A stretch of 64,000 bases of DNA from Macrostomum lignano (GCA_002269645.1 NIVC01001326.1:243708-307707), one strand, 5' to 3'; counted from the stretch's first letter, positions 16,401 to 64,000 are shown. Numbers and translations are program-made. The notes: generated by a model not told the origin, from the letters alone.

Positions 16401-29483
<13,083 letters not shown>

Positions 29484-35340: not shown

Positions 35341-35784
35341 AGACTCAGCTCGTCACTCATTGACCCGGACCTGAACTTGCTCTCATCTTCAATCCTGCAG
35401 AATTACCTCAGTAAAGCTGGCTAGCTCATGCTAACAATATGCTTTTCATCAATAAATATGTATTTATCATTTGAATGCCTATAGAAGCTGGTTAGAAGCA
35501 CTAATAACTTTTCTGGGTCAATTTTGCCAGCCTATATCAACAATGCTTTTCTGTATCCCGGATGTGTTTTGTACAGCCCTTCATGCTCACAGTTGTGCAG
35601 TGCTGTCAGCTGTCCCTGATTTGTTTAATTCGATCATGAATTAAATAAATATACGATTGTAATTCTCTAATGGCTTGACAAAGTTGCAGTTTAATCAGTT
35701 TTAATTGAAGCTTGCTGTGTCAGACTCGAACTGCTTTTTCAGGAAATAATTGAGTTGCCTAATCACCAATGGTAACTGTGTACA

Positions 35785-38844: not shown

Positions 38845-39687
38845 CAAATTACTTTACGAAAAACATACTTATTTCATGCTTTCATTGTTAAAAATCTAAT
38901 AAATCATGAAGCAGTACGAACTGCATTGAATATATTGCCATTTTTGTATTGAAGCTTCTTGATCTCCGTTTTCTCTACTTTTCCATATCCGCTGTTTACT
39001 CTTCAGTATCCACCGTCTACTCTGCAGTACCTCTCTTCAGCATCTTTACTGTCTACTCTTCAGTATCTACTGCCTACTCTTCAGTATCTATTGTCTACTC
39101 CTCAGTAGCCGCTATCTACTATTTTTTATCATTCCATTTCCGCTATCTACTCGTCACAATCGAAATGATTGTTACAATAATAACGTCAGCCTTCAATTTG
39201 TTTGTCACCTGTCAAGTATATATTTAGCATAATGAAATAGCAGTGTGTACTTTCGAATCGAGCACTTTTGTTATAACTTATAAGTTTGCTGATTGAATTA
39301 CAAGCACATATCGCTGTGCACTTGAACTAATACGTACATGGTTTCGAGTTAATGTTTTGATTTCGATAAATTAATATGCAAATTTTGGTCACGGGTCATA
39401 TAGTCAGTCTTTCTGAGGCCTTCGAAAAGAAACCGGCAGTTTCGAGAATTACGTTGGCTGCTAATTAGCAAATATTGCTTGTATAGTTATGCGCATTCCC
39501 TTCCCTCAACAGGTTGCTCCTCTGCTGTAGATTAGCGATGAACGCAGGGTTAAAAATAGTAACCGATTGTTTTTGCTGAAAAAACACGTCACACCGACCC
39601 AACTTGCATAAAAAATGTCAGCGGAAGGTGAAATTCAGCATTGGCGCTATTGTAAACAGCACTGGAGTGACCCTGGCTGGCTAGAGA

Positions 39688-39728
<41 letters not shown>

Positions 39729-39918
39729 AGAAAACAAACCGCATTTGCCTAGAGCGATCTGGTCACAGAAGCACAATGAGCTGCCCAATGCCAGAGCAAA
39801 GGGCTATTTAAGTTCAGCTTGAGCAGGTCTTGCAACAACTCTCTCTCTCTCTCTCTCTGTCTCGCTGCTGCGCGCTTGTTTATCTGCTTTGATCCTCAAG
39901 CCAAAGCAGCAAACAGAA

Positions 39919-40458
39919 ATGGCCAAGTGCTGCCAGTTGATGCCCTGCTTTCCGCTCCGAGTGATCCGAGCATTCTCAGCCAAGGACCGCAGCCTGTACT
40001 GCCTGTTCCATGTGCTGCTCTGGTGCGGCCTGGTCGCCTTCTTTGCCTGCCTGTCGCTGTACGCAGTCGAGCGTGAGTACGTGTACTTCATCGTGCCGCT
40101 GCCCAGCATCTTTCTCATGTTCGCCGGCCTGTTCGGCTTCCGCTGGCTGGCCATTCGCAATAATGACAAATTCGAGCTGCACCATCGGCGACGGGGGCAT
40201 CGACGCGGCGTCGCTGGCGACGATGGCGAGTCCGGCTCGGTGCCGCACGGCAGCTTCCCGCCGCCGCCGCCGCTGTACGCGCTGGAGTACGACGGGCCAG
40301 TTTTCACCATCTACGGAGTGCTGGTGCCGCCGCCGACTTACGAGGAGGTGCAGGAGGTTGCGGCTGCGGCTGCTGCATCCGCCGTTGATCAGCCTCATCC
40401 GACGGCAGCACCAGCTAGCACCGAGGAAACTCCAATCACGAAAGCTTTGACAACTTAG
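39919..40458 (+). CDS. Two-TM protein with two cytosolic PPxY motifs, 179 aa, family not identified
   Basis: GC-rich intronless ORF with two hydrophobic helices, a basic stop-transfer segment, and PPPLY and PPPTY motifs. Confidence 0.7.
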   Translation: MAKCCQLMPCFPLRVIRAFSAKDRSLYCLFHVLLWCGLVAFFACLSLYAVEREYVYFIVPLPSIFLMFAGLFGFRWLAIRNNDKFELHHRRRGHRRGVAGDDGESGSVPHGSFPPPPPLYALEYDGPVFTIYGVLVPPPTYEEVQEVAAAAAASAVDQPHPTAAPASTEETPITKALTT

Positions 40459-41125
40459 GAAGAAACGCTGAAAAAAGACGCTTATAAACCCGCAGTCGAA
40501 CTGGTACAAGCATTTAACGTGATCGCGTCTCAGTATAAGCCAGTTGATTGTAAAATTCTTTTTTTTGAAAAATTCGATCAGTAAATTTCTTTTCCGGTTT
40601 CTAAGATGCTCAAGACGTTCTCATAAGCATGATTCGCGGTGCACATATTCGCCTATGTTCTCGATGTTTATTTTATTTTCCATTTTTATAGGCCCAAGTA
40701 TTCAATAGTGCTTGCTTTGTAAGACCTAACGGCCAATAAGCATTATTGCTCATGATCAGAATCTCTTTCGCTTACAAAAGTTTTTCTTAATCCACCTGAG
40801 CTTCTGCATTTTCTGTAACCCTTTTCATTTATGATTGTAATTAACTACCGATTCATCGCAGGGTGCCAATTTAAGGTTTCATTGACTTTTCTGGCACTTT
40901 TGTCACTGTACTAAAAATTATAGCGAATACTACGTTTTTTGTGATGCGTGTATAGTAATACATAGAGGTGATTACAACTAGGTAAACAGGGAGTGCAAGC
41001 CCTTCGTGCGGATGGGTGCACACGGGAAAGTGAGATCTTAGACAGAAAATACGTGAAAGTCCTAAATTTTCGATTAAAGGAACAACTACACGACTTGCAT
41101 AGAAAAGACGACTTAACGTGCATTA

Positions 41126-47387: not shown

Positions 47388-48452
47388 AGACTGGGGAGTC
47401 AGTTGAAGACATTGGGGAGTCAGTTTAAGACACTGGGGAGTCAGTTTAAGACACTGGGGAGTCAGTTTAAGACACTGGGGAGTCAGTTGGAGACACTGGG
47501 GAGTCAGTTGGAGACACTGGGGAGTCAGTTTAAGACACTGGGGAGTCAGTTGGAGACACTGGGGAGTCAATTGGAGACACTGGGGAGTCAGTTTAAGACA
47601 CTGGGGAGTCAGTTTAAGACACTGGGGAGTCAGTTGGAGACACTGGAGAGTCAATTGGAGACACTGGGGAGTCAGTTGAAGACACTGGGGAGTCAGTTGG
47701 AGACACTGGGGAGTCAGTTGGAGACACTGGGGAGTCAGTTGAAGACACTGGGGAGTCAGTTTAAGACACTGGGGAGTCAGTTTAAGACACTGGGGAGTCA
47801 GTTTTAGACACTGGGGAGTCAGTTGGAGACACTGGGGAGTCAGTTGGAGACACTAAGGGAGTCAGTTTTAGACACTGGGGAGTCAGTTGGAGACACTGGG
47901 GAGTCAGTTGGAGACACTAAGGGAGTCAGTTGGAGACACTGGGGAGTCAGTTGGAGACACTGGGGAGTCAGTTGGAGACACTGGGGAGTCAGTTTAAGAC
48001 ACTGGGGAGTCAGTTGAAGACACTGGGGAGTCAGTTGGAGACACTGGGGAGTCAGTTGGAGACACTGGGGAGTCAGTTGGAGACACTAAGGGAGTCAGTT
48101 GGAGACACTGGGGAGTCAGTTGGAGACACTGGGGAGTCAGTTGGAGACACTGGGGAGTCAGTTTAAGACACTGGGGAGTCAGTTGAAGACACTGGGGAGT
48201 CAGTTGGAGACACTGGGGAGTCAGTTGGAGACACTGGGGAGTCAGTTGGAGACACTGGGGAGTCAGTTGGAGACACTGGGGAGTCAGTTTAAGACACTGG
48301 GGAGTCAGTTGGAGACACTGGGGAGTCAGTTGGAGACACTGGGGAGTCAGTTGGAGACACTGGGGAGTCAGTTGGAGACACTGGGGAGTCAGTTTAAGAC
48401 ACTGGGGAGTCAGTTGAAGACACTGGGGAGTCAGTTGGAGACACTGGGGACA
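47388..48452 (+). repeat. 21-bp minisatellite (gacactggggagtcagttgga)
   Basis: Direct reading. Confidence 0.95.
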
Positions 48453-48778
48453 CTGGTGATGACGTAAGTCTGAATTTAGATCTAAGAGTGTATGTAGAAA
48501 TAGTTCCGGGGATTAGAATTCAGCAGGTTTAAAATCCGCGGGTTTCAACAGCTTGTTAATATAGTCTAAAATCTTTCATGTAGTGGCACTGTCAATCCGA
48601 GTGTCTATGGTTAGCAATAGTTACTTTTACACTGCACAGAGCTTTGAAGTTGAGTTTGAAACCTTTAATACTTTAAACTTTGGTCTTCGTCAGTCTATTT
48701 GCGATTTAAAATAATTAAATAAGTTTTGCAGACACACCCTCGAGTCCCGTCAGCGTCGGCGAAAAAAAGAGATTAAGC

Positions 48779-51623
48779 ATGAGCGGACAGCAGAAATTGC
48801 AGGCCAAAGCCAATCAAGGTATTGTATTTTCATTGCTATTTGCTGTTTTAGGACATTCATTTTATGCTACTGTCCACACACAATTCAGTAGTATAGTTTA
48901 GCTGTATAATTTGAAATATAAATTAATGCAGGAGCCACCGAAGCTCGAATTAGCGGCGACATGTCGGACGCGGCCGGCTCCGCGGCGGTTGGCCGACTAC
49001 AGCAGAGCATCACCTACAATGCCAGACTGCAGGCTATGGGTCACTATCTGAGGTGAGCCAAGTCTTGTCTGGGAATCAATTCCATTTTCCAACCTAAGAA
49101 ACTTTTCATAAATATATTCTGATGAAGATGTGGACAGCTCGAACTAGCAATTGATTAGTGCATAGACAATGTTTAGTTAAAAATGGATTCCTTACAGATA
49201 GAAATGGCATCCATACAGATAGAAATGGCACCCATACAGATAGAAATGGCATCCATACAGATAGAAATAGCATCCATACAGATAGAAATGGCATCCATGC
49301 AGATAGAAATGGCATCCATACAGATAGAAATCGCATCCTTACAGATAGAAATGGCATCCATACAGATAGAAATGGCATCCATACAGATAGAAATGGCATC
49401 CATACAGATAGAAATGGCATCCATACAGATAGAAATGGCATCCATACAGATAGAAATGGCATCCATAAAGATAGAAATGGCATCCATACAGATAGAAATG
49501 GCATCCATACAGATAGAAATGGCATCCATACAGATAGAAATGGCATCCATACAGATAGAAATGGCATCCATACAGATAGAAATGGCATCCATACAGATAG
49601 AAATGGCATCCTTACAGATAGAAATAGCATCCATACAGATAGAAATGGCATCCTTACAGATAGAAATGGCATCCATACAGATAGAAATGGCATCCTTACA
49701 GATACAAATGGCATCCATACAGATAGAAATGGCATCCATACAGATAGAAATGGCATCCTTACAGATAGAAATAGCATCCATACAGATAGAAATGGCATCC
49801 TTACAGATAGAAATGGCATTCATACAGATAGAAATCGCATCCATACATATAGAAATGGCATCCATACAGATAGAAATGGCATCCTTACAGATAGAAATGG
49901 CATCCATACAGATAGAAATGGCATCCTTACAGATACAAATGGCATCCATACAGATAGAAATGGCATCCATACAGATAGAAATGGCATCCTTACAGATAGA
50001 AATAGCATCCATACAGATAGAAATGGCATCCTTACAGATAGAAATGGCATCCATACAGATAGAAATCGCATCCTTACATATAGAAATGGCATCCATACAG
50101 ATAGAAATGGCATCCTTACAGATAGAAATGGCATCCATACAGATAGAAATCGCATCCTTACAGATAGAAATGGCATCCGTACAGATAGATATAGAAATGG
50201 CATCCATATTCATACAGATAAAAATGGCATCCATTAAGATATAAATGGCATCCATTAAGATATAAATGGCATCCATACAGATAGAAATGGCATCCATACA
50301 GATAAAAATGGTATCCATACAGATAGAAATGGTATCCATACAGATAGAAATGGCATCCTTACAGATAGAAATGGCATTCATGTTCATACAGATAGAAATG
50401 GCATCCTTACCGATAGAAATGGCATTCATATTCATACAGATAAAAATGGCATTCATTAAGATATAAATGGCATCCATTAAGATATAAATGGCATCCATTA
50501 AGATATAAATGGCATCCATACAGATAGAAATGGCATCCGTACAGATAGAAATGGCATCCTTACAGATAGAAATGGCATCCATACAGATAGAAATGGCATC
50601 CTTACAGATAAAAATGGCACCCTTTTACAGATAAAAATGGCATCCTCAATTATAAATGTTTGTCTTGCTTTAACTTTTAAGGCAGAGGGCTAATTGCGTG
50701 CATTGACTGTAAAGTCAACGCTTTAGCATTTCGTTTTGAACTTTTTTATAACTTTTCCAACGCAATCCAGTGAAGAGCGTACTGCTTATAGAGGCTCACT
50801 GCTTATACAGGATCTGTCCTTCTGTGTTGGGTTCGGTAACAGCTTGTTTAAATATTTTTTTCCTATCGAAAGCATGCTAAAGTTTTATATTTGAGAAAAT
50901 TTTAGTAACCTTGTTTAAGATTGTGTTTGAGGAATTTCGATTCTATGTTTAGAAAGGAAAAGTATTTGGTTAGAAAACTATTCGATAAAATTCAACTTGC
51001 TGTTAGTTGCACGAAAACATGTCGCATCCGCTTGAAGCTATGGAGCGTCGTCTAGATGCGTTTGCTTACTACAATAGGTGAGGATATTTTCGGGCGAGTA
51101 CGAATCCCAGGATTAAGGGACAATGTTAAAGCCCACCTTATCTAGATACCTGCAAAGTGTGACAACAATATACAGTACCGTGAACATTACTTGTTTGTTA
51201 GTTAATTAGATAGTTAATTAGGTAGTTACTTGTAGTTAGTTAGTTATTTATTTTGTTAGTTATTTAGTTAGTTAGTTAGTTAGTTAGTTACTTAGTTAGT
51301 TAGTTAGTTACTTAGATAGTTGTTAGTTAGTTAGTTTGTTTGTTTGTTAATTAGGTAGTTACTTCTAGTTAGTTAGTTAGTTATTTAGTTAGTTAGTTAT
51401 TTATTTTAGTTATTTTTTTAGTTATTTAGTTATTTAGTTAGTTAGTTAGTTATTTAGTTAGTTAGTTAGATAGTTACTTAGATAGTTAGTTAGTTTGTTT
51501 GTTTGTTAATTAGGTAGTTACTTGTAGTTAGTTAGTTAGTTATTTATTTTGTTAGTTAGTTAGTTAGTTATTTAGTTAGTAAGTTAGTTAGATAGTTAGA
51601 TAGTTAGTTAGATAGTTAGTTAG

Positions 51624-51656
<33 letters not shown>

Positions 51657-51745
51657 CAGTTAGTTAGTTAGTCAGTCAGTTAGTTAGTTAGTTAGTTAGT
51701 TATTTAGTTAGTAAGTTAGTTAGATAGTTAGTTAGATAGTTAGTA

Positions 51746-51791
<46 letters not shown>

Positions 51792-51831
51792 ATAGTTAGT
51801 TAGTTAGTTATTTAGTTAGTTAGTTAGTTAT

Positions 51832-51863
<32 letters not shown>

Positions 51864-51878
51864 ATAGTTATTTAGTTG

Positions 51879-51914
<36 letters not shown>

Positions 51915-51931
51915 TTCAGTTAGTTAGTTAA

Positions 51932-51965
<34 letters not shown>

Positions 51966-51966
51966 G

Positions 51967-52003
<37 letters not shown>

Positions 52004-52046
52004 ATAGTTAGTTAGATAGTTAGTTAGATAGTTAGTTAGTTAGTTG

Positions 52047-52087
<41 letters not shown>

Positions 52088-52107
52088 ATAGTTAGATAGT
52101 TAGTTAG

Positions 52108-52151
<44 letters not shown>

Positions 52152-52183
52152 ATAGTTAGTTAGATAGTTAGATAGTTAGTTAG

Positions 52184-52223
<40 letters not shown>

Positions 52224-52307
52224 ATAGTTAGTTAGATAGTTAGATAGTTAGTTAGTTAGATAGTTAGTTAGTTAGTTAGTTATTTAGATAGTTAGTTAGA
52301 TAGTTAG

Positions 52308-52375
<68 letters not shown>

Positions 52376-52415
52376 ATAGTTAGTTAGATAGTTAGATAGT
52401 TAGTTAGATAGTTAG

Positions 52416-52479
<64 letters not shown>

Positions 52480-52511
52480 ATAGTTAGTTAGATAGTTAGA
52501 TAGTTAGTTAG

Positions 52512-52581
<70 letters not shown>

Positions 52582-55500
52582 CGGGCCACAGCACCTCAGC
52601 AGTAAACACGCCTGGCTTTTTTGCCAGCCCAGGCCCCACGAATGGTTCGATTTCGTGCTCGGCCACTTTCATTTACGGGTCGTGTGCACGAAAATTGGCC
52701 GGGAGGTTGTCGTGCGATTCCCAGCCACGAAGGCCAGTTCCTAAGGCACAGAGAGTGTACATGCCTGATGATTAGAAAGTCAGGGCCGCTGTACACCCTG
52801 TGTGAGCGTGTGCTGAGTGCGTGCCTGCGTACAGTATTGGCGCGCTCGTATTGTGCTCAGGAGCTGGCTGTGGGACGATGTTGACGATGGTGTTGCGCCA
52901 GGATGCCCGCAGCCTTCTTGCAATGGTTGTTATTGTACTTTATTTACATATTTATCTGGCTTGTTTGTCGGTTAGTTAGCTAATGAGTCAGGAGATTGCG
53001 CCTTAAATCAAGGCAACAGTCGACCACAGTAAGCCAAAGTCCAATTCCGCTGACCCCTGAGCACGCACACGGATGGGTACTCAAGCACACAAAAGACTCT
53101 GTACATTGGCCTTGACTTTCTCGTCGTGTGCATACACCCTTCACACTCACCGTCCAGCCTCCCGGAGTCGATGAAGCGCCGCGTACGCGCCCTAAAGAAG
53201 CTGCAATTCCACACTCTGGAAATCGAATCGAATTTCTATCGGGAGCTGCACGCCCTGGAAATGAAATACGCCTCAGTTCACGCTGAGCAGTTTGACAAGC
53301 GCTACAAAATTGTGAAGGGAGAGTACGAGCCGACTGACGCCGAGGCCGACTGGCCCGAGGACTCCGAGGCCGAACTGCAGCTGGCCGCTCTGGCTCGCAG
53401 CGTCGGCGGAACGACAGAGAAGTCCGCGGCCGCGGCGGCGCAGCTGTCCGGTGACGCAAAAGGCCTGCCGGGATTTTGGCTGACTGTGCTAAAAAATGTC
53501 GAACTAATCGGCCAGATGATTCACGAGCATGACGAGCCGATTTTGAAGCACCTGACCGACATCAGGGCCGGCCTGTTCTCGGGCGACCAGACTGGCTTCA
53601 CGTTGGAGTTCCACTTCTCACAGAATGAGTACTTCTCCAACAGTGTGCTGACTAAGCAGTACTTCACCCGGATGTCGCCCGACCGGCGCCAGCCGTGGAG
53701 TTACGACGGCCCGGAGATCTACAGATGCCGCGGCTGCGACATTCAGTGGTGCAAAGGCAAGAATGTGACGGTGAAGATTCTTAAAAAAGTGCAACGCCAT
53801 CGCGGCAACGGTCAGAAGCGGACGCTCACTAAAACTGTGGAGACCGATTCGTTCTTTAATTTCTTCAATCCGCCTACGCAGGGTGAGTTCAAGGACATTT
53901 AAATTTTATTCCAGATTAGGCCTAGAGGCGGATTCATCAGCTTATGGATTTTCAGCTACTGGACGCACGCTTAAACAAACAAAAGCCTCTATAAGCTAGG
54001 TTTTTTACATTCGCTTGGTAGATGTTATCATGCCCCTACCTAACCTAACTTCTAATATTTTACTAAACGAAAACTACTAATAGTAGTTCAAAATGCATAT
54101 AAAAAATCTCCCCCCCCTAGTATCCTGCGGGTTTCCTGGTTTATAAGATAAGGACTTACGATTAATAGCTATAGAAAAATGTGTCCTTTCACTGTAAAAA
54201 AAATAACTTTATGTGCATGGACCCTGCAAAAGATAAATTCACAATGCTTGCTTCCTTTTTTCAGCCATTGACGACCTCAATGATGATGTAAGCTGCGTAA
54301 TTGTTTTTTGTGTTATTTGACTTAAACTTAGCGCACTTTAGTATATAATTAGTAACGGAATTTTACTTAACCGCCTCGCAGGATTCCGAGGTTAGAGCAA
54401 AAGGGTTTTATTTTTATCCAGATTTTCTTTTTTCGTTTTTAAATATTTTAAGTTCTGTTAAATTTCTATATTGTTACTTAAAGTAGCGTGGCTCGAACTT
54501 AAAAGTGTAATTTTTCACTTTTGTTTCCTTTTTAAATTGCTATAGGACGAGGAGATTGAAAATCTGCTACAGTCGGACTTCGAAATTGGGCATTTCATCC
54601 GGGAACGAATTGTGTCCAGGGCTGTGCTGTGTTTCACTGGCGAGGGCCTGGACGACGATGATGAGGTTAGAGCATTCTTGACCTTTAATGTTCTCTGATG
54701 TTACCTATTTTTATGTAAACACCACGAAATCGGTTTTTTGCTACTATTAAGTCAGTAGTACTCAGAGGCGTAGTCTTTACAGTGTTGGTTTGGCAACGTA
54801 ATGATACACCAGGGACGTCTGGATGCCTGGACTGGAAGCAGTGAAGCAGACCGGAAAATCTTTCAGGGACGTCTGGACTCTGGATGCCTGGAATGGAAGT
54901 GGGTAACCCACTCCAAAATCTTTCAGGGACCTCTTGGGGATGCCTGGACTAGAAGCGGACCTGTCCATCTCAAAATCTAGTAGGGACCTCTGATGAATGC
55001 TTGGAATGGAAGCGGACCTGCACCCCACCCAAAATCTACCAGGGACCTTTAGATACCTGGACTGGAAGCTGACCCGCATCCACCTTAAAATATATTACCA
55101 TACCCACTAAAACATCATACGCAGCTGCTTAGATCCATGACTGCCTCCCCCCCCCCACGTTGACCTCGCTATTTTATTTGCGCATCCTCACCTGCCCAAG
55201 TCGCTAATGTGCATATTTAATTAGGCGGACTTGCTGCTGCGCGCATGAGCTCTCCTCCCCCCCCCCAGCTGCCCATATCGGAATTATAAACTGCATGTCA
55301 AGCCTGTTCTAGCTTCCAGTGCTTATCAAATTGATAAAAAATTAGAATCCATCAAATTAAACCGCATGGCTCCACGTAGCAAGTGAACGATGCATTATCT
55401 ATTGTCGGCATTGCATCTTAGTCTGCTTCTAGTAGCTGGCAGCAGCAACGAGGCCTCCGATTGTCCGGCAGCCGCCGACCTGCCAATCGGAGCCGTGTTC

Positions 55501-58500
55501 GGCCAGTCCATCGGTGACGCAAGAAAACGGAGCGCGCTTCGGTTCGCTCTGGCCGACCTCGGTTTCGAACTGGAGTCACCTGCTGGCTGTCCGGCCGCCG
55601 CTCAATCGATACGTCCGCGTCCCCTGGTTGCCATGGTGCCGGACAGGGACGCCACTAGAGCCTATCTAGCCGCCTGCGGACTATTAAACACTGGCGCTCT
55701 AGCCCTGATCGGCCCTGATCACCCGGCTCTGACTAGCGCCGATCTGGCCGCTATTGCTAGCGCCACTCAGGCGCCAATTATCGATCTGAGACCTTCGGAA
55801 TCTCTGGCCGCACCTGGCCGAGCCGACCAGCCGTCGGCCGCTCCGCCATTCCTGCTGCGTCTGCACCCGCCGCTGGAACAGCTGGCAGCCTGTCTGAGCT
55901 CCGCTATCGACTATTTCGATTGGCATGAGGCTCTCTACGTCTACGAAGATTTACGAGCCTGGCTCAGGTTAGAAGCGGCATTGAGGCGTCGAGTTTCGCC
56001 TGAGACTCTCTACTTGCGCACTAGACGATATTCAATAGCGGCCGGGCCTGAGCCCCTACTAGCGGAGATTGAAGCCTCCGGCTGGGCCACCGTTGTGCTG
56101 GACCTGAGCCCGGCTAGCGCTGCTCATTTTCTAAGAACCGCTGCCGCGCTGGGCATGTTAGGCGGCTCCTATCACTACGTGTTGGCTAATTTAAACAGCG
56201 CCCACCTGGCCGCTGCCTACCATGGCAGCCTGTTCAATATCACGGCGTTTAGACTGGAGCCATCGGATCGGCAGCACTACGATCGAGTGCTGGCCGGCCT
56301 TCGGGACTGGCAACGCCAACGGCAGCTTCGAGTAGGCGTTGGCGTCGGCTCGGCGTCGGATGACAGCGGCGATAGCGGCCGCCATGCGGTCAGGCCTGAG
56401 GACGAGGAATTCGGGCCGTTGGAACCGGATGGGCACCTGACTCTGGAGGTGGCGCTGGTGTACGATGCGGCTCAGGTGAGGTGGCTAGGGTATGACTGCT
56501 TTAGGGATCTTCGCTTGGATTTATTCTTTTCTTTTCTCATCTCTTCTCTCATCTCTTTTCTCATCTCTTCTCTCTACGTTTCTCATCTCTTCTCTCTTCT
56601 TTTCTCATCCCATCTCTCTTTCTTTCTTTTCTCTCTTCTCTCATCTCTTCTCTCTTCCTTTCTTATCTCTTCTCTATTCTCTCATATCTTCTCTTTTCCT
56701 TTCTCATCTCTTCTCTCTTCTTTTCTCATTCCATCTCTCTTCCTTTCTTATCTCTTCTCTCTACGTTTCTCATCCCATCTTCTATTCTCATCTCTTTTCT
56801 ATCCTTTTCTCATTTCTCACTTTTTCTAGTCTCATTCTTTATATTTTCTTTTCTCTCCTCTTCTTTAATATCTTTTTTTCTTTCATAGTTGGCTTCTCCC
56901 TAGCTGCCTTCAGTTTCTCATTAATATTAATTTCCTAGTTGTTTCTTGCTCTCACAAAAATCTATTTTAGTTTTGAAGGACATTCCATGTACCGTTAACC
57001 CAGGTGCTGCTAAAAGCTCTGGCCGATTTGCACAGAAGCCGTCAGCTGGTTCACAATGGCGGCAACGGCAGCGGCAGCGGTGGCTCCGCTTTCTCCCGCT
57101 GCTCGGCCAGGCCCAACCAAGCCGCCAGTTCCCCGTGGCCACTAGGCGCCAGCCTGTGGAACTATCTGCACTCGGTGGACCTGCCCAGCACAGGTTTAAC
57201 CGGCCCCATCCGATTCAGTCGAGGCGTTCGAGCTCCAATTGAGTCGTCGCCAGTTAACTTGTCAAGACCAGAATCGACTGGCGGACTGGTAGTGCTTCAT
57301 CAGCGTCGTGACACTGGCCTTGTCCGGTTGGCCAGCTGCGACTCCGCTGGCCGCTTAAAGCTGCCCAACCGGAAGCGGCCATCTGGCCAGCAGTCAACTT
57401 CCGGCGACTTCCCTACTGGCGGCCGACTGCACGGTCGCCGCCTCCGCGCCGTGGTGGTGGCCGCCCAGCCGTTTGTGTGGATCAAGCGCGAGCACCGGTC
57501 CCGCTACCTGAGCCCGGGCGGGCACATCCTGCCCGGGGTGGAGTTTCACGCGCATCATCTGGAAGGCTTCTGCGTGGACATGATTCGATTGATTGCTAAT
57601 CGAACGGGCCTGAAATGGAGTGTGTACCGATCGCCAGACGATAAATATGGTAGCTGCGTTAAACCGCCCGGCTGTCACCACAGATTAGCCAGCAACGGAT
57701 CGGCTGCTCCCTGCCAATGCCAATGGAACGGCATGATGGCCGAGCTGGTGTCCGGCCGGGCCGACATCGCACTTGGCTCCTTCACCATCACCTACGAACG
57801 CGAGCGAGTGATTGATTTCACTAAGCCGTTTATGAATCTGGGTATTAGCATATTGTTTAAACGGCCGAAAGGTGAAAAGCCAGGCTTGTTTAGCTTTCTG
57901 ATGCCGTTAGCGGTTGAAGTGTGGGTGTGCGTGCTGGCGGCCTACCTGGTTACTACCGGCATCATTAACCTGCTGGGCCGGCTGTCGCCCTACGAATGGA
58001 CCAATCCGCACCCTTGCGTGGCTGACCCGCCCTACCTAGTGAACGAACTGTCATTATCCAACGCATTCTGGTTCACAGTTGGCACCCTGATGCAGCAGGG
58101 CTCGGATATCAGTCCCCGAGCGGCTAGCAGCAGATTAGTTGGCGTCATCTGGTGGTTTTTCACCTTGATATTAATTAGCTCCTATACGGCTAATCTGGCC
58201 GCCTTTCTCACTGTCGAACTGGTGGTGATGCCGATTAAAAATGCCGAGGAGCTGTCCAACCAGACCGCTATCGAGTACGGCCTGCTCAGCGGCGGCTCAA
58301 CTGAGGCATTCTTTGAGACTTCTCACATTGCCACTTATTCCCGCATGGCCAAGTACATGCGCGCCAGGCCCGGCGTGAAAACTGCCACTACTAGCGCCGG
58401 CATCGAGCGGGTGAAGAAAGGCGGCTACGCTTTCCTGATGGAATCGGCTATGATTGAATATCACATTGAGCGGGAATGCAATCTGCAGCAGATCGGCGGC

Positions 58501-61500
58501 CTCATCGATAGCAAAGGCTACGGAATTGGGGTTGCTCCGAAACGGGAAGAGCTTGGCGACCTGCTTACGTTGAAGATATTAGAGCTGCAGCGGGACCAGG
58601 AACTGCAGGTGAGTTCTTTATCAGTCAAAATGTCGCTTTCATTGTCGGTCAAAATGTCGCTTTCATTGTCGGTCAACATGTCGCTTTAGTTGTCGGTCAA
58701 AATGTCGTTTCAGTTGTCGGTCAAAATGTCGCTTCAGTTGTCGGTCAAAATGTCGCTTCAGTTGTCGGTCAAAATGTCGCTTTCATTGTCGGTCAAAATG
58801 TCGCTTTCATTGTCGGTCAACATGTCGCTTTAGTTGTCGGTCAAAATGTCGTTTCAGTTGTCGGTCAAAATGTCGCTTCAGTTGTCGGTCAAAATGTCGC
58901 TTCAGTTGTCGGTCAAAATGTCGCTTCAGTTGTCGGTCAAAATGTCGCTTCAGTTGTCGGTCAAAATGTCGCTTTAATTGTCGGTCAAAATGTCGCTTTT
59001 TTTGTCGGTCAAAATGTCGCTTTTATTGTCGGTCAACATGTCGCTTTAGTTGTCGGTCAAAATGTCGCTTTAATTGTCGGTCAAAATGTCGCTTTTATTG
59101 TCGGTTAACATGTCGCCTTTATTGTCGGTCAACATGTCGTTTCAGTTGTCGGTCAAAATGTCGTTTCATTTGTCGGTCAAAATGTCGCTTCAAATTGTCC
59201 ATCAAAATGTCGTTTCAGTCTTCAGTCAAAATATCGCTTCAAACTGTCCGTCAAAATGTCGCTTTAGTTGTTGGTAAAATGTCGCTTTAATTGTCGGTCA
59301 AAAATGTCGCTTCAGTTGTCGGTCAAAATGTCGCTTTAATTGTCAGTCAAAATGTCGCTTTAGTTGTCGGTCAAAATGTTGCTTTAATTGTCAGTCAAAA
59401 TGTCGCTTTTATTGTCGGTCAAAATGTCGCTTTTATTGTCGGTCAAAATGTCGTTTCATTTGTCGGTCAAAATGTCGCTTCAAATTGTCCATCAAAATGT
59501 CGTTTCAGTCTTCAGTCAAAATATCGCTTCAAACTGTCCGTCAAAATGTCGCTTTAGTTGTTGGTAAAATGTCGCTTTAATTGTCAATCAAAAATGTCGC
59601 TTCAGTTGTCGGTCAAAATGTCGCTTTAATTGTCGGTCAAAATGTCTCTTTTATTGTCGGTCAAAATGTCGTTTCAGTTGTCCGTCAAAATGTCGCTTCA
59701 GTTGTTGGTAAAAATGTCGCTTCAGTTGTTGGTAAAAATGTCACCTCAGTTGTTGGTCAAAAATGTCGCTTCAGTTGTCGGTCAAAATGTCGCTTTTATT
59801 GTTTCAAAATGTCGCTTCAGTTGTCGGTCAAAATGTCGCTTCAGTTGTCGGTCAAAGTGTCGCTTCAGTTTTCGTTCAAGATGTCGTTTCAGTCTTCGGT
59901 CAAAATATCTCTTTAAATTGTCCGTCAAAATGTCGCTTTAGTTGTTGGTGAAAATGTCGCTTTAATTGTCGGTCAGAAATGTCGCTTCAGTTGTCGGTCA
60001 AAATGTCGCTTTTATTGTCGTTCAAAATGTCGGTTCAGTTGTGTACGGTCAAAATGTACGGTCGAAATGTCGCTTGAAAGTTTTTGCTATATTGAGGATT
60101 GTCGTTTAGAAAAATCGCTATCGCTTAAACTGCCGCTGATCCCCGTATCCCGCAGACACTAAAGAACAAATGGTGGAAGGACACGGGCATCTGCGGCGGC
60201 CAAGACTCGCAGCAGTCGAAGAATGCCAATCCACTCGACATGCAGAGCATCGGCGGCATTTTCCTAGTGCTGGTGGGCGGCATCATCGTGTCGACTTTAG
60301 TGGCCATCGTTGAATTCACTTGGCACTGGCGGAAGATTCGTCAATCTGGTCAAGTTATCGGCGCCGCCGACCTCTGCAGCCGGATGTGCCAGGAGGCCAA
60401 GTTCTCCTTGAACTGCTTCGGCTCCAGCGAGAAGCCGCAGCCTCAGCGTGCATGCAGCGAGCCGTGCTGCGAGATGCCTCTTCTAGCGTCGCCTCATCAT
60501 CAGCTGCCGCAATATCAGCACGTGCCGCCTCCGCCGCCGCCGCCGGTGCCGCCACGGCAAGGTTCCTCCTTGTCGCCAAATCCAGCTCGCTACTTCCGGC
60601 CTCTGGACATTGGCGGCGGCGGCGGCGGGTGGCCGGAGTTTGACTTCTGACTTCTTTTGGTTGTTGCGGATATCTGCTGTGTGTGGGATGGGACTGCGGA
60701 TATCTGCTGTGTGTGGGATGGGACTGCGGATATCTGCTGTGTGTGGGATGGGACTGCGGATATCTGCTGTGTGTGGGATGGGACTGCGGATATCTGCTGT
60801 GTGTGGGATGGGACTGCGGATATCTGCTGTGTGTGGGATGGGACTGCGGATATCTGCTGTGTGTGTGGGATGGGACTGCGGATATCTGCTGTGTGTGGGA
60901 TGGGACTTCCCTATATCGAAAATTCACTATAGCTTCTTAAATACAGATTTACGGTAGAACGTGTAAAATTATTTATATATTTCGTCTTTTTTTGCTTTAT
61001 AATTGCAAATTTATATTCCCTAGCCTTTTATATTACTATAAGTAGTTCTCGCACGCAAGCACATTTATACTGCTTATCAACTCCTTTTTAAATACATTTC
61101 TCACAGTTTGACGACGAAGACGAGGAAGAGGAGGTGCGCAGTGAAAAAAATTGATGCCAATTAAAGTGCAACATGTTCCTTTGGCTTTGTTGCTATATTG
61201 TTGAGTTTGGACTTTACAGCTTTAATTGTTTTTTTGTTAAAATGTTCCAGCTTACGTTTTTCAAATTTGTTTTATTCTTTTATCTCTAAAAATCATTTAT
61301 TTTCTTTTCAAACATTGTGTCAGGATGACGACGGAGACAACGAAGTGAACGACTTTGATGAAGAAGAGGCTGCACAGCAGGTGGGTGATTTTCTGTGTAC
61401 AGCTGACAGGTGGGTAATGGGAGTGTCTGTGTACAGCTGACAGGCGGGTGATAGGAGTGTCTGTGTACAGCTGACAGGTGGGTGATGGGTGATGGGAGTG

Positions 61501-62782
61501 TCTGTGTACAGCTGACAGGTGGGTAATGGGAGTGTCTGTGTACAGCTGACAGGTGGGTAATGGGAGTGTCTGTGTACAGCTGACAGGTGGGTGATAGGAG
61601 TGTCTGTGTACAGCTGACAGGTGGGTAATGGGAGTGTCTGTGTACAGCTGACAGGTGGGTGATAGGAGTGTCTGTGTACAGCTGACAGGTGGGTAATGGG
61701 AGTGTCTGTGTACAGCTGACAGGTGGGTAATGGGAGTGTCTGTGTACAGCTGACAGGTGGGTGATAGGAGTGTCTGTGTACAGCTGACAGGTGGGTGATG
61801 GGAGTGTCTGTGTACAGCTGACAGGTGGGTGATGGGAGTGTCTGTGTACAGCTGACAGGTGGGTAATGGGAGTGTCTGTGTACAGCTGACAGGTGGGTAA
61901 TGGGAGTGTCTGTGTACAGCTGACAGGTGGGTAATGGGAGTGTCTGTGTACAGCTGACAGGTGGGTGATAGGAGTGTCTGTGTACAGCTGACAGGTGGGT
62001 GATGGGTGATGGGAGTGTCTGTGTACAGCTGACAGGTGGGTAATGGGAGTGTCTGTGTACAGCTGACAGGTGGGTGATAGGAGTGTCTGTGTACAGCTGA
62101 CAGGTGGGTAATGGGAGTGTCTGTGTACAGCTGACAGGTGGGTGATAGGAGTGTCTGTGTACAGCTGACAGGTGGGTAATGGGAGTGTCTGTGTACAGCT
62201 GACAGGTGGGTGATAGGAGTGTCTGTGTACAGCTGACAGGTGGGTGATAGGAGTGTCTGTGTACAGCTGACAGGTGGGTGATAGGAGTGTCTGTGTACAG
62301 CTGACAGGTGGGTAATGGGAGTGTCTGTGTACAGCTGACAGGTGGGTGATGGAGTGTCTGTGTACAGCTGACAGGTGGGTAATGGGAGTGTCTGTGTACA
62401 GCTGACAGGTGGGTAATGGGAGTGTCTGTGTACAGCTGACAGGTGGGTGATGGGAGTGTCTGTGTACAGCTGACAGGTGGGTGATGGGAGTGTCTGTGTA
62501 CAGCTGACAGGTGGGTGATGGGAGTGTCTGTGTACAGCTGACAGGTGGGTGATAGGAGTGTCTGTGTACAGCTGACAGGTGGGTGATAGGAGTGTCTGTG
62601 TACAGCTGACAGGTGGGTGATGGAGTGTCTGTGTACAGCTGACAGGTGGGTGATGGGAGTGTCTGTGTACAGCTGACAGGTGGGTGATAGGAGTGTCTGT
62701 GTACAGCTGACAGGTGGGTGAGGTTAGAGTCTGAACACTTCCTTTATCATTACTGCTCGTTGATTTTTAGGCTCGCCACTAA
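48779..62782 (+). CDS. NAP1: Nucleosome assembly protein 1 (NAP1L1/4-like); exons 48779-48818, 48932-49052, 53158-53882, 54265-54287, 54546-54665, 61107-61133, 61324-61380, and a probable last coding exon from 62771 (C-terminus uncertain)
   Basis: YLS|LPESMKRRVRALKKLQ, GLPGFWLT.LKN, EHDEPILKHLTDI, FTLEFHFSQNEYFSNSVLTK, GCDIQWCKGKNVT, DSFFNFFNPP and DFEIGHFIRERIV.RAVL.FTGE, followed by the acidic tail LDDDDE|FDDEDEEEE|DDDGDNE. Phases are consistent. Confidence 0.9.
49190..50640 (+). repeat. 21-bp minisatellite (gaaatggcatccatacagata), NAP1 intron 2
   Basis: Direct reading. Confidence 0.95.
51200..52580 (+). repeat. Degenerate (GTTA)n microsatellite, NAP1 intron 2
   Basis: Direct reading. Confidence 0.95.
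52581..52920 (+). mobile_element. Dispersed repeat family 2, longest copy, with a degenerate tRNA-like head (probable SINE)
   Basis: The head has gggccac..., a cctggc/gccag stem and GGTTCGATT near 52643. The body is shared with 8700-8860 and 7600-7960. Confidence 0.6.
55390..60650 (+). CDS. Ionotropic glutamate receptor, non-NMDA (kainate/AMPA-like), about 1061 aa; exons 55390-56475, 57004-58608, 60156-60650
   Basis: Signal peptide and ATD; S1 [50 protein letters not shown]; M2 WF.VG.LMQQGSD; M3 [23 protein letters not shown]; S2 GGSTEAFF, YAFLMES..IEY and GG.IDSKGYG; LK.KWW..G.C; M4 IGGIFLVLVGG. The ligand residues T, R, S, T and E are conserved. Confidence 0.95.
58622..60075 (+). repeat. 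24-bp minisatellite (aaaatgtcgcttcagttgtcggtc), iGluR intron 2
   Basis: Direct reading. Confidence 0.95.
60665..60905 (+). repeat. 30-bp minisatellite (tgcggatatctgctgtgtgtgggatgggac) just after the iGluR stop
   Basis: Direct reading. Confidence 0.95.
61390..62722 (+). repeat. 34-bp minisatellite (gtgtctgtgtacagctgacaggtgggtaatggga), about 39 copies, NAP1 intron after exon 61324-61380
   Basis: Direct reading. Confidence 0.95.
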
Positions 62783-63527
62783 AATGCTTTGACTCGACTA
62801 GTGCAACCTTCTAGTGAGTACTTGCTTTGTTTATATTGGGGTGAGATTTTGCATTGAGTTGTTCTTGGTGCTCACTGCAGCCAGACGTTTTTAAACTCTC
62901 TCATTTTTCAGACGGCCTTCCAACCGTGACAACTGCCAGCTGTGCAATAATAATTTCTATTGAAGAACAGCAACTGACAAGATATAAGCTATTGGTTTCA
63001 TTTTTAATCAATTTTAAGATTGATTAGCAAAACAACTTTTGTATAGATTGAATTTATTAATGAATTTGTGCACCTTTATAACCGCTATTAAAATACTACT
63101 CTTAGTAGCGCATCCGCGTGTCCTTTTTATTATTGTCTTTCTAATTTTATTTATTTAGACAGCGGTGACAGAGTTCAGTTTTTGGAAGCTGTGTTGTTTT
63201 TTAATTGTATTAACGCAATTGTAATTTTATTATTTTGCCCGAAACTGCTCACTCTAATTTTGTACTCAATGCAAACTTCTACCCAGCACCTTTTTTATTC
63301 GGCGGCAAGCATGCTAGTTAGCAATTCATTAATACTTTGCCTACCTAATCCCCAAGCTTAGTGGTGCTTGAGCTGAATAAATAAGCTATAGATATCAGTG
63401 ATTAATTAGCACTTATTTGGCTCCCGTTTTATTTTTATTTGTTGAACTTTTTTTACAATTTTAGCGTTAACTATATAGCGTTTGCTTGTCATCATAAGCC
63501 TTCAGATACTCGATTTGAACTGAAACC

Positions 63528-64000
63528 CTCCCAGATCCTCAGTTGCTGGGCCAGCCTCCCAGATCCTCAGTTGCTGGGCCAGCCTCCCAGATCCTCAGTT
63601 GCTGGGCCAGCCTCCCAGATCCTCAGTTGCTGGGCCAGCCTCCCAGATCCTCAGTTGCTGGGCCAGCCTCCCAGATCCTCAGTTGCTAGGCCAGCCTCCC
63701 AGATCCTCAGTTGCTAGGCCAGCCTCCCAGATCCTCAGTTGCTGGGCCACCCTCCCAGATCCTCAGTTGCTGGGCCAGCCTCCCAGAGTGTCAGTTGCTG
63801 GGCCAGCCTCCCAGATCCTCAGTTGCTGTGCCAGCCTCCCAGATCCTCAGTTACTGGGCCAGCCTCCCAGATCCTCAGTTGCTGTGCCAGCCTCCCAGAG
63901 TGTCAGTTGCTGGGCCAGCCTCCCAGATCCTCAGTTGCTGTGCCAGCCTCCCAGATCCTCAGTTACTGGGCCAGCCTCCCAGATCCTCAGTTGCTGTGCC
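63528..64000 (+). repeat. 28-bp minisatellite (cctcccagatcctcagttgctgggccag) running off the window end
   Basis: Direct reading. Confidence 0.95.

What the first reader, a model, noticed from the sequence alone, without database searches (positions are those of the whole stretch)
54666..61106. A complete three-exon glutamate receptor gene nested in a NAP1 intron on the SAME strand
Seen: NAP1 exon 54546-54665 ends ...GEGLDDDDE|GT, and its acidic tail resumes in phase at 61107 (FDDEDEEEE) and 61324 (DDDGDNEVNDFDEEE), each with good splice sites. Between them lies the whole iGluR (55390-60650) with its own start, two introns and stop. Established: nested genes are usually antisense to the host, because same-strand nesting creates splicing and polyadenylation conflicts. 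Here NAP1 pre-mRNA must skip two iGluR acceptors (57003, 60155) and the iGluR 3' end. The NAP1 donor is phase 0, as are both iGluR acceptors, so in-frame NAP1-iGluR chimeras are possible. Inference: mutually exclusive or cell-type-specific processing, or release of the iGluR mRNA by trans-splicing.
Basis: partly seen in the sequence, partly recalled or inferred. Interest (0 to 1): 0.78.

Follow-up and report, generated by a model that had tools for sequence, protein, structure and literature searches.

The report
Glutamate receptor gene inside NAP1 intron
In the flatworm Macrostomum lignano a complete kainate-type glutamate receptor gene sits, on the same strand, inside an intron of a histone-chaperone (NAP1) gene; the same arrangement is kept at two other NAP1 copies in the genome, so it is real and old, but it is an ordinary host/nested gene pair.

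Summary
The window is Macrostomum lignano contig NIVC01001326.1. NAP1 exon 5 ends at 54665 (...GEGLDDDDE|gt). A 1061-aa kainate-type iGluR (55390-56475, 57004-58608, 60156-60650) follows on the same strand. The NAP1 acidic tail then resumes in phase at 61107-61133 and 61324-61380, followed by a short terminal exon.

Two other M. lignano loci (L001, L009) carry a diverged NAP1 paralog (65% identity) with an intact iGluR ORF (51% identity) in the homologous intron, followed by the same three small tail exons. The annotated protein at those loci joins the exons across the nest. The nest therefore predates an old duplication and is not a mis-assembly.

Same-strand nests are common (about 37% of human nests). 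The phases do allow in-frame chimeras, but no transcript shows one. SL trans-splicing exists in this species but is untested at this gene.

The most likely mechanism is an independently transcribed, retrogene-derived nested gene that NAP1 splices over, with possible H13/Mcts2-like interference. No transcript data for this locus could be reached.

A side finding: the two iGluR introns are lineage-specific gains at proto-splice sites, both filled with tandem repeats.

Verdict: new member of a known kind, modest interest.

The parts
48779..48818 (+). NAP1 exon 1 (ATG...; MSGQQKLQAKANQ). The public annotation starts this gene's CDS at 48734, 2 nt after a TTTTGCAG acceptor.
   Evidence: sequence, splice sites; a called NAP gene with a 392-aa product starts at L008:18816 = window 48734.
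48932..49052 (+). NAP1 exon 2 (...RLQAMGHYL)
   Evidence: weak similarity to the N-termini of P0001 and P0003; ag/gt borders; phase fits exon 3.
53158..53882 (+). NAP1 exon 3 (most of the NAP domain)
   Evidence: Pfam NAP E 1.8e-93; 63% identity to P0001.
54265..54287 (+). NAP1 exon 4 (AIDDLNDD)
   Evidence: restores the frame; matches TIDELGSD of P0001.
54546..54665 (+). NAP1 exon 5, ending ...GEGLDDDDE|gttaga (phase 0). This is the last host exon before the nest.
   Evidence: The homologous exon in the paralogs ends ...GEGLEDED|gtaagt.
54666..61106 (+). Host intron 5 of NAP1 (6441 nt), containing the whole iGluR gene
   Evidence: homologous host introns in L001 (22499-28232) and L009 (16592-22273).
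55285..55319 (+). Candidate 5' signals of the nested gene: TATAAA at 55285-55290 and TTCCAG (matches the SL-acceptor motif [T/C]TNCAG) at 55314-55319. Both are unproven.
   Evidence: motif taken from PMC8629364. Roughly one such match is expected by chance in this interval (my estimate).
55390..56475 (+). iGluR exon 1 (start codon, signal peptide, amino-terminal domain)
   Evidence: in-frame TGA at 55384-55386 upstream.
56476..57003 (+). iGluR intron 1 (gtgagg...cccag). CT-rich tandem repeats, 36% GC, with CAGGTG at both borders. It is absent from both M. lignano paralogs and from the Haliotis and Plutella homologs.
57004..58608 (+). iGluR exon 2 (ligand-binding domain, M1-M3 with SYTANLAAF, S2)
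58609..60155 (+). iGluR intron 2 (gtgagt...ccgcag). About 59 copies of a 24-nt repeat, with GCAG at both borders. It is absent from the paralogs and from the mollusc and insect homologs.
60156..60650 (+). iGluR exon 3 (M4, cytoplasmic tail, TGA stop)
60651..61106 (+). Presumed iGluR 3' UTR / 3'-end region. It holds a 30-nt x 8 tandem repeat at 60665-60907. There is no AATAAA or ATTAAA, only AATACA at 60940 and 61091.
61107..61133 (+). NAP1 exon 6 (FDDEDEEEE), the first host exon after the nest
   Evidence: The F aligns with the conserved Y/F of NAP1 tails. The homologous exon is YESEDDE in L001 and L009.
61324..61380 (+). NAP1 exon 7 (DDDGDNEVNDFDEEEAAQQ)
   Evidence: homologous to GEDGDEDDMEEDEDERVIGQ in L001.
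62714..62929 (+). NAP1 terminal-exon region. The candidates are acceptor 62771 -> ARH* (62771-62782, homologous to LRN*/HRH*), acceptor 62714 -> VGEVRV* (fits the annotated length of 392 aa), and acceptor 62912 -> TAFQP*. The first AATAAA downstream is at 63376.
   Evidence: homologous 3-codon exon in L001 and L009. Which acceptor is used was not resolved.

Best explanation
This is a host/nested gene pair. A kainate-type ionotropic glutamate receptor gene lies in sense orientation inside intron 5 of a NAP1 histone-chaperone gene of Macrostomum lignano. It most likely descends from an intronless retrocopy.

Shown:
- The anatomy.
- The fact that the tail exons belong to NAP1.
- The same nest at three loci in the genome: one old paralog pair plus a recent duplicate.
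- Purifying selection on the nested ORF.

Inferred:
- The iGluR is transcribed from its own promoter in the 724 nt between NAP1 exon 5 and its ATG, in a restricted (presumably neuronal) set of cells. Its transcript ends in the 456 nt before NAP1 exon 6.
- In the many cells that express NAP1 but not the receptor, RNA polymerase reads through the silent nested gene. The whole 6.4-kb intron, including the receptor's own splice sites and weak 3'-end signals, is removed by pairing donor 54665 with acceptor 61106.
- Where both genes are active, nested transcription would be expected to truncate or reduce NAP1 transcripts, giving a tail-less NAP1 ending ...DDDDEVRAFLTFNVL*. This is what happens at the mammalian sense-sense retrogene nest H13/Mcts2.
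- The nest persists through duplications simply because a gene inside an intron is copied and inherited with its host.
For: - Anatomy and domains.
- Closest solved structure is GluK2, E 7e-141.
- The window is 100% identical to M. lignano NIVC01001326.1 over 20.5 kb.
- Paralogous nests:
  - L001: NAP1 P0001 exon ends ...GEGLEDED|gtaagt at 22498; intact 1039-aa iGluR ORF at 24472-27591 on the same strand; then YESEDDE (28233-28253), GEDGDEDDMEEDEDERVIGQ (29708-29770) and LRN* (30048-30059).
  - L009: same layout.
- P0001 comes from a transcriptome-based annotation (PMC5730564) and spans the nest. A Logan contig that holds a continuous, intron-free NAP1 coding sequence, and so looks like a transcript, from a relative carries an uninterrupted tail.
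- The NAP gene called at the window locus gives 392 aa. That is too long for termination just after exon 5, where the maximum is 15+353 aa.
- Exon 6 starts with the conserved aromatic residue of NAP1 tails.
- The nested ORF is under purifying selection: dN/dS 0.12 between L001 and L009.
- Retrogene origin: all three type-B/P0136 copies are intronless, whereas the mollusc and insect homologs have at least 13 exons.
- The type-B nested iGluRs are absent from the RNA-seq-based gene calls while their host NAP1 is present. This argues against efficient co-production from host pre-mRNA.
- Precedent for the interference mechanism: PMC13309782.
Against: - No transcript, CAGE, SL-read or poly(A)-site data for this locus could be reached, so the promoter, the 5' end, the 3' end and the cell-type separation are all inference.
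- There is no AATAAA or ATTAAA between the iGluR stop and NAP1 exon 6 in the window. The receptor mRNA might therefore end elsewhere or share NAP1's downstream exons.
- The NAP1 exon-5 donor (GTTAG) departs from the species consensus GT[G/A]AG, while the iGluR donors fit it. Competition for the internal phase-0 acceptors is therefore not excluded.
- I could not retrieve the annotated 392-aa product, and my candidate sequences were not found by exact look-up.
- No non-coding block is conserved between the type-A and type-B nests that would mark a promoter.
Confidence: 0.6

Rival explanations
1. SL trans-splicing makes the receptor mRNA. The 5' end of the iGluR mRNA is created by adding the 35-nt spliced leader at an acceptor upstream of 55390. 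The substrate is either an outron of the gene's own promoter (a mild variant of the best explanation) or the NAP1-promoter-driven pre-mRNA. In the second case each primary transcript yields either NAP1 or the receptor, an 'operon inside an intron'.
For: [quoted passage not shown] The acceptor motif is [T/C]TNCAG (PMC8629364; PMC5730564).
- TTCCAG lies at 55314-55319, 71 nt upstream of the ATG.
- The annotated NAP1 CDS itself starts 2 nt after TTTTGCAG, so the host is probably trans-spliced.
Against: - One motif match in this interval is expected by chance.
- No comparable [T/C]TNCAG lies in the 150 nt upstream of the type-B iGluR ATG.
- The type-B nested genes are missing from the RNA-seq-based annotation while the host NAP1 is present. 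That is unexpected if they were processed from the same abundant precursor.
- A ubiquitous chaperone and a neuronal channel are unlikely co-transcription partners (inference).
- No SL sequence was found in any DNA I hold.
Confidence: 0.2
2. The locus makes functional NAP1-iGluR fusion proteins, or alternative isoforms of one gene, by splicing donor 54665 to acceptors 57003 or 60155. All of these sites are phase 0.
For: The phases are compatible. The predicted chimeras of 1042 and 507 aa are open.
Against: - The two older-type nests have no introns and therefore no such acceptors, so a fusion cannot be the conserved purpose.
- A fusion would lack the signal peptide and the amino-terminal domain and would place a membrane protein behind a nuclear chaperone.
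- The iGluR has its own ATG, its own signal peptide and an upstream in-frame stop.
- An exact look-up of these two chimera sequences was planned but never run; I have no database test of them either way.
Confidence: 0.03
3. Artefact. The exons from 61107 onward belong to another gene or arise by chance in acidic low-complexity sequence, or the assembly joined two loci wrongly.
For: - The tail exons are short, low-complexity and flanked by long tandem repeats that could mislead assemblers.
- My exact protein models were not found in the collection.
Against: - The same order (exon 5, iGluR, three tail exons) occurs on three different contigs.
- The exon phases, sizes (9/7, 19/20 and 3 codons) and the terminal xR(H/N)* micro-exon are conserved.
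- The conserved aromatic residue sits at the start of exon 6.
- The annotated product P0001 spans the nest.
Confidence: 0.02

Closest known systems
Mouse H13/Mcts2 host/nested pair (imprinted retrogene in H13 intron 4)
   Same: A retrocopy-derived protein-coding gene sits inside an internal intron of an unrelated, broadly expressed host, in sense-sense orientation. The host must read through it to reach its 3' exons. Active nested transcription causes host intronic polyadenylation (PMC13309782). This is the best model for how the flatworm locus is likely to behave.
   Different: There, the choice is set by imprinted CpG-island methylation. Nothing is known about regulation here. Here the nested gene is large (3.2-kb CDS), one copy has acquired two introns, and the nest has been duplicated and kept at three or more loci.
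Cholinergic gene locus (VAChT/unc-17 nested in the first intron of ChAT/cha-1)
   Same: Same-strand nesting of a neuronal membrane-protein gene in a host intron, conserved over long evolutionary times. This is established knowledge; the literature hits are.
   Different: In the cholinergic locus the nested gene lies in the first intron, shares the promoter and 5' non-coding exon with the host, and the two products act in one pathway. Here the nest is in intron 5 of 7, downstream of nearly all the host coding sequence, and the two proteins are functionally unrelated.
Genome-wide host/nested gene pairs of human, mouse and Drosophila
   Same: An entire gene within one intron of another. About 41% of human nested genes are single-exon and about 37% are on the host's strand (PMC3192792). 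The orientation split is 'broadly similar' in mouse and human (PMC11694760).
   Different: No such pair has been described for Macrostomum in the papers I could search. Retention of the pair through an ancient duplication is not a usual feature of the catalogues.
SL-resolved operons of M. lignano and C. elegans
   Same: Same-strand genes transcribed through one another in an organism with SL trans-splicing (PMC8629364).
   Different: In operons the genes are arranged in series, with the upstream gene's poly(A) site about 100 bp (under 1 kb) before the next acceptor. Here the 'upstream' gene is unfinished when the nested gene starts and resumes after it.

Membership tests
Intronic host/nested gene pair, same strand | The nested gene's whole coding region lies inside a single intron of the host | tested here: met
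   iGluR CDS 55390-60650 lies within NAP1 intron 54666-61106.
Intronic host/nested gene pair, same strand | Host exons on both sides are joined in one mRNA | tested here: inconclusive
   - Strong indirect support comes from tail homology, the conserved exon layout, and the annotated P0001 spanning the paralogous nest.
- The 392-aa product called at this locus needs exons beyond exon 5.
- No cDNA of this locus was seen, and the exact look-ups failed.
Intronic host/nested gene pair, same strand | Both genes are on the same strand | tested here: met
   All exons are on the + strand. The same holds in L001 and L009.
Intronic host/nested gene pair, same strand | The nested gene has its own transcript (own 5' end and poly(A) site) | not testable with these tools
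   Only sequence hints are available: TATAAA at 55285, TTCCAG at 55314, AATACA at 60940 and 61091.
NAP1 / NAP1L histone chaperone (Pfam PF00956) | NAP domain | tested here: met
   E 1.8e-93, profile positions 1-266 of 266. 48-65% identity to metazoan NAP1L1/4 among the listed hits.
NAP1 / NAP1L histone chaperone (Pfam PF00956) | C-terminal acidic tail following ...YFTGE(A/G)L | tested here: met
   Exons 6-7 are about 75% D/E and align to the tails of 10 homologs.
NAP1 / NAP1L histone chaperone (Pfam PF00956) | C-terminal ...ECKQQ motif of most animal NAP1L1 proteins | tested here: not met
   The window model ends ARH (or VGEVRV / TAFQP); P0001 ends LRN; P0002 ends HRH. P0003 and the mollusc, annelid and arthropod homologs end ECKQQ. 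This is a lineage-specific loss and does not affect family membership.
Ionotropic glutamate receptor, AMPA/kainate-like | ATD + bipartite ligand-binding domain + pore/TM region with SYTANLAAF | tested here: met
   Pfam ANF_receptor, Lig_chan-Glu_bd, SBP_bac_3 and Lig_chan. SYTANLAAF is present. Best PDB match is GluK2 at 7e-141.
Retrogene (processed copy) | Loss of all parental introns | tested here: inconclusive
   Type-B copies (L001, L009) and P0136 are intronless. The window copy has two introns, at positions not shared with Haliotis or Plutella. This is consistent with an intronless ancestor plus later gains, but intron loss in type B is not excluded.
Retrogene (processed copy) | Poly(A) remnant and target-site duplications | not tested
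   Not expected to survive at this level of divergence (51% amino-acid identity between the paralogs).
SL-resolved operon | The downstream gene carries the spliced leader and follows the upstream gene's poly(A) site by under 1 kb | tested here: not met
   The iGluR starts 724 nt after a NAP1 internal exon, not after NAP1's 3' end, and NAP1 continues downstream. SL usage itself is not testable here.
Shared-promoter nest (cholinergic-locus type) | The nested gene lies in the first intron and shares the host's 5' exon | tested here: not met
   The nest is in intron 5 of 7. The host ATG is in exon 1, so sharing it would put an upstream ORF ahead of the receptor.

The most novel reading that the evidence does not exclude
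The receptor mRNA is cut out of NAP1-promoter-driven pre-mRNA by SL trans-splicing at an acceptor just upstream of 55390, plus 3'-end cleavage before 61107. Each primary transcript then becomes either a full NAP1 mRNA or a receptor mRNA plus a tail-less NAP1. This 'operon inside an intron' coupling would be why host and guest have stayed intact together at three loci through an ancient and a recent duplication.
Probability: 0.08. Interest if true: 0.65.

Novelty: new member of a known kind. Interest (0 to 1): 0.3.

Why it matters
Host/nested pairs are common, but their regulation is understood at very few loci. This one sits in a transgenesis-capable, trans-splicing flatworm. It comes as a natural series:

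- an old paralog pair plus a recent duplicate;
- one copy with two internal introns and no canonical poly(A) signal;
- the others intronless, with AATAAA signals.

That makes it a convenient system to ask how a host gene reads through a same-strand guest. It can also test whether nested transcription removes the histone-binding acidic tail of NAP1.

Separately, the two receptor introns are clean candidates for recent intron gain at proto-splice sites by insertion of tandem-repeat DNA, an event rarely caught in animals.

None of this overturns current understanding.

Tried and rejected
- **Window iGluR against the 5.8-billion-protein index.** Low-complexity words swamped the search and no close relatives came back. 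Repeating with the L001 ORF found P0135 and P0136.
- **Spliced window proteins.** Exact look-ups of six and then four models (NAP1 with three C-termini, with and without the 15-aa N-extension; the tail-less read-through form; the iGluR; and two single-exon read-through ORFs) were all 'not in the collection'. A control showed that neighbouring window proteins are in the collection. So the annotated 392-aa NAP product either differs from my models or is withheld. I could not decide which.
- **Reading 'g2' in BOX15_Mlig006736g2 as 'second gene of a transcriptional unit'.** I first took this as a hint of an operon. One search shows that g1 and g2 are copies on different contigs, so I dropped the idea.
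- **Supplementary tables of two M. lignano papers.** I searched them for the gene ids and found nothing.
- **Testing whether the host intron position is ancient.** Look-ups of four mollusc and annelid NAP1 genes all failed, so this is undetermined.
- **Synteny beyond NAP1 between L001 and the window.** Only tandem-repeat matches turned up.
- **Conserved non-coding blocks between type-A and type-B nests.** None found.
- **SL sequence in the window or loci.** None found.
- **Rfam and tRNA scans of 48-64 kb.** Nothing found.
- **The 50%-representative search.** It collapsed all Macrostomum copies into P0135 and added no closer relative.

Full report
**What is in the sequence.** Region 48.7-63 kb of the window carries a NAP1-type histone-chaperone gene on the + strand. 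I built its model from the sequence and from homology. The eight exons are 48779-48818, 48932-49052, 53158-53882, 54265-54287, 54546-54665, 61107-61133, 61324-61380, and a short terminal exon. All have AG/GT borders and consistent phases, and together they give 374 aa with the ARH* ending. Pfam matches the NAP domain over its full length (E 1.8e-93).

Between exon 5 (...GEGLDDDDE|gttaga) and exon 6 (cacag|FDDEDEEEE) lies a 6441-nt intron. It contains, on the same strand, a three-exon gene (55390-56475, 57004-58608, 60156-60650). This gene encodes a 1061-aa ionotropic glutamate receptor with:
- a hydrophobic signal-like N-terminus;
- an in-frame stop just upstream of its ATG;
- the ANF_receptor, Lig_chan-Glu_bd and Lig_chan domains;
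- the SYTANLAAF pore motif.

Its closest solved relative is the kainate receptor GluK2 (7e-141).

**Where the window comes from.** Two small ORFs of the window are exact products of Macrostomum lignano assembly GCA_002269645.1. Locus L008 from contig NIVC01001326.1 is 100% identical to window 29919-50458. The window is therefore that contig, and record coordinate = window + 243707.

The public, transcriptome-based annotation calls a NAP-domain gene whose CDS starts at window 48734. That is two bases after a TTTTGCAG acceptor and 15 codons upstream of my ATG. Its product is 392 aa. I could not retrieve that protein.

Its length rules out termination just after exon 5, which would give at most 15+353 aa. 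It equals 15 + exons 1-7 + six codons from an acceptor at 62714 (VGEVRV*), the only acceptor downstream of exon 7 that gives six codons. However, the exact look-up of that candidate failed, even though neighbouring window proteins are in the collection. The terminal exon is therefore unresolved between 62714, 62771 (ARH*) and 62912 (TAFQP*).

**Do the exons from 61107 onward belong to NAP1?** Yes, on four lines of evidence.

1. The best database relative is M. lignano NAP1 P0001 (65% identity). Its tail ...GEGLEDEDYESEDDEGEDGDEDDMEEDEDERVIGQLRN, and that of a relative's sequence P0002 (...ERIINQHRH), match the window's ...GEGLDDDDE/FDDEDEEEE/DDDGDNEVNDFDEEEAAQQ/ARH in length and character. P0002 is encoded by a 1390-nt Logan contig whose NAP1 coding sequence is continuous and intron-free, so I read it as a transcript; that is an inference from the contig, not a stated library type.
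2. In an alignment of eleven NAP1 proteins, the F that opens exon 6 falls on the conserved Y/F that follows the ...GE(A/G)L-acidic stretch across molluscs, annelids and arthropods.
3. The genomic locus of P0001 (L001) has the same exon layout:
   - an exon ending ...GEGLEDED|gtaagt at 22498;
   - then, 5.7 kb later, exons of 7, 21 and 3 codons (YESEDDE; GEDGDEDDMEEDEDERVIGQ; LRN*).
4. P0001 comes from an annotation built on assembled transcripts (PMC5730564), so in the paralog the junction across the intron has RNA support.

**The nest is conserved.** tblastn of the window receptor against L001 gives one 982-aa HSP at 51% identity, on the NAP1 strand, at 24550-27318. That is inside the homologous intron. 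The region holds an uninterrupted 1039-aa ORF (24472-27591).

A second, recently duplicated copy of that locus (L009, contig NIVC01000010.1) has the same order: exon 5 ends at 16591, the ORF is at 18499-21618, and the tail exons start at 22274, at about 23774, and at 24105. The two type-B ORFs differ at 41 synonymous and 17 non-synonymous sites (dN/dS 0.12). They are therefore functional genes, even though neither appears among the genes called at those loci. UniProt does hold a 944-aa model of one of them (P0135).

A NAP1 distance tree gives (P0003, ((P0001, P0002), window)). So the window (type A) and L001/L009 (type B) are paralogs, and they split before M. lignano diverged from the species that yielded P0002. 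The nest predates that split.

A fourth receptor copy, P0136, is intronless and has no NAP1 exons within 10 kb. It is closer to type B (59-62%) than to the window (50%), so it is a secondary, un-nested duplicate. Three independent contigs with the same arrangement rule out mis-assembly.

**Origin of the guest and of its introns.** All type-B copies and P0136 are intronless, whereas the Haliotis and Plutella homologs have at least 13 coding exons. The simplest history is a processed (retro) copy that landed in sense orientation in NAP1 intron 5.

The two introns of the window copy fall at positions where neither M. lignano paralog has an intron, and neither does the mollusc or insect gene.
- Intron 1 sits exactly in a CAG|GTG proto-splice site that is intact in L001 (GTTCAG|GTGCTG), and CAGGTG is present at both borders.
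- Intron 2 follows CAG, with GCAG at both borders.
- Both are AT-richer than the exons (36-40% vs 60% GC) and consist almost entirely of tandem repeats: CT-rich 12/22-mers in intron 1, and about 59 copies of a 24-mer found nowhere else in the window in intron 2.

I read them as lineage-specific intron gains. Loss from type B cannot be strictly excluded without other flatworm genomes.

**How it probably works.** Nothing here measures transcription, so this part is inference.

The receptor has its own ATG and signal peptide. A TATAAA lies 105 nt upstream, and 724 nt of unique intron sequence precede it. In M. lignano, proximal regions of up to 2 kb usually suffice for tissue-specific expression (PMC5730564). 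The type-B guests are missing from the RNA-seq-based gene calls while their hosts are present. That fits a rare-cell (neuronal) gene rather than a by-product of an abundant NAP1 precursor.

I therefore favour an autonomous nested gene that is silent in most NAP1-expressing cells, so that the host simply splices over it.

The best-studied sense-sense retrogene nest is mouse H13/Mcts2. It shows what to expect where both are active: nested transcription causes host intronic polyadenylation or loss of elongation (PMC13309782). Here that would give NAP1 lacking its acidic tail (...DDDDEVRAFLTFNVL*).

Details that could matter:
- The window copy has no AATAAA or ATTAAA between the receptor stop and NAP1 exon 6, only AATACA at 60940 and 61091. 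L001 has AATAAA at 27769 and 28034.
- The NAP1 exon-5 donor GTTAG departs from the species consensus GT[G/A]AG, while the receptor's donors fit it.

The premise that nests are 'usually antisense' is too strong. About 63% of human nested genes are on the opposite strand (PMC3192792). A recent mouse/human survey found only a slight bias (PMC11694760).

In-frame chimeras are possible by phase, giving 1042- and 507-aa products. They cannot be the conserved function, because the older-type nests have no internal acceptors.

Trans-splicing is a fair idea for this organism. About 30% of its genes carry the 35-nt SL, and the acceptor motif is [T/C]TNCAG (PMC8629364). The only support at this gene is a single TTCCAG at 55314-55319, which chance would supply. 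I put 0.2 on SL addition of any kind and under 0.1 on production from host pre-mRNA.

**Verdict.** In kind it is a host/nested gene pair of the common sense-sense type: a new member, not a new mechanism. The more unusual aspects are retention of both partners through an old duplication and the two apparently young, repeat-filled introns.

Noticed in passing
window 56476-57003 and 58609-60155: Both introns of the nested iGluR look like lineage-specific gains. They are absent from the two M. lignano paralogs and from the Haliotis and Plutella homologs. They are inserted at CAG|G proto-splice sites, with short direct repeats at the borders (CAGGTG and GCAG). They consist almost wholly of tandem repeats.
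   Followed up: partly
L001 24472-27591; L009 18499-21618: The nested type-B glutamate receptor genes are intact (1039 aa) and under purifying selection (dN/dS 0.12). Even so, they are not among the genes called at these loci in GCA_002269645.1. Only a partial UniProt model (P0135, 944 aa) exists.
   Followed up: yes
window 48725-48779: The public annotation starts the NAP1 CDS at 48734, two bases after a TTTTGCAG acceptor that fits the SL trans-splice motif. This suggests that the host NAP1 mRNA is itself SL-trans-spliced.
   Followed up: partly
window 62714-62929; L001 30048-30200: The Macrostomum NAP1 paralogs have lost the ...ECKQQ C-terminus of other animal NAP1L1 proteins. They end in a 3-codon micro-exon instead (ARH*, LRN*, HRH*). 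An alternative downstream exon follows it (TAFQP* here; NPWSAYPAELINNNQQF in P0114).
   Followed up: partly
window 48000-64000 and throughout the window: Nearly every intron and spacer is occupied by a different long tandem array. Examples: a 21-mer at 49181-50645, GTTA x 348 at 51193-52581, a 30-mer at 60665-60907 in the iGluR 3' region, a 34-mer x 39 at 61392-62721 in NAP1 intron 7, and a 28-mer at 63527-64000. These arrays create long spurious ORFs on both strands.
   Followed up: no
L003 10001-13030 (NIVC01000010.1): A further intronless receptor paralog, P0136 (1009 aa, GC3 0.76), lies outside any NAP1 gene. It is closer to the type-B nested copy than to the window copy, so a nested gene has been copied out of its host at least once.
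   Followed up: partly
window 7151-10329, 12619-13356, 22000-29022, 38227-40458: Other genes in the window, all on the + strand:
- an EXOSC10/Rrp6-like 3'-5' exonuclease with an HRDC domain;
- a mannose-6-phosphate-receptor-domain protein;
- a xanthine dehydrogenase / aldehyde oxidase (molybdopterin-binding domains);
- two small annotated proteins of 205 and 179 aa.
   Followed up: partly
window 35500-40705 vs L004 (NIVC01000888.1): A second contig of the same assembly is about 97% identical to this part of the window. This fits the known recent duplication (hidden polyploidy) of M. lignano, so a near-identical fourth copy of the NAP1/iGluR nest probably exists.
   Followed up: no
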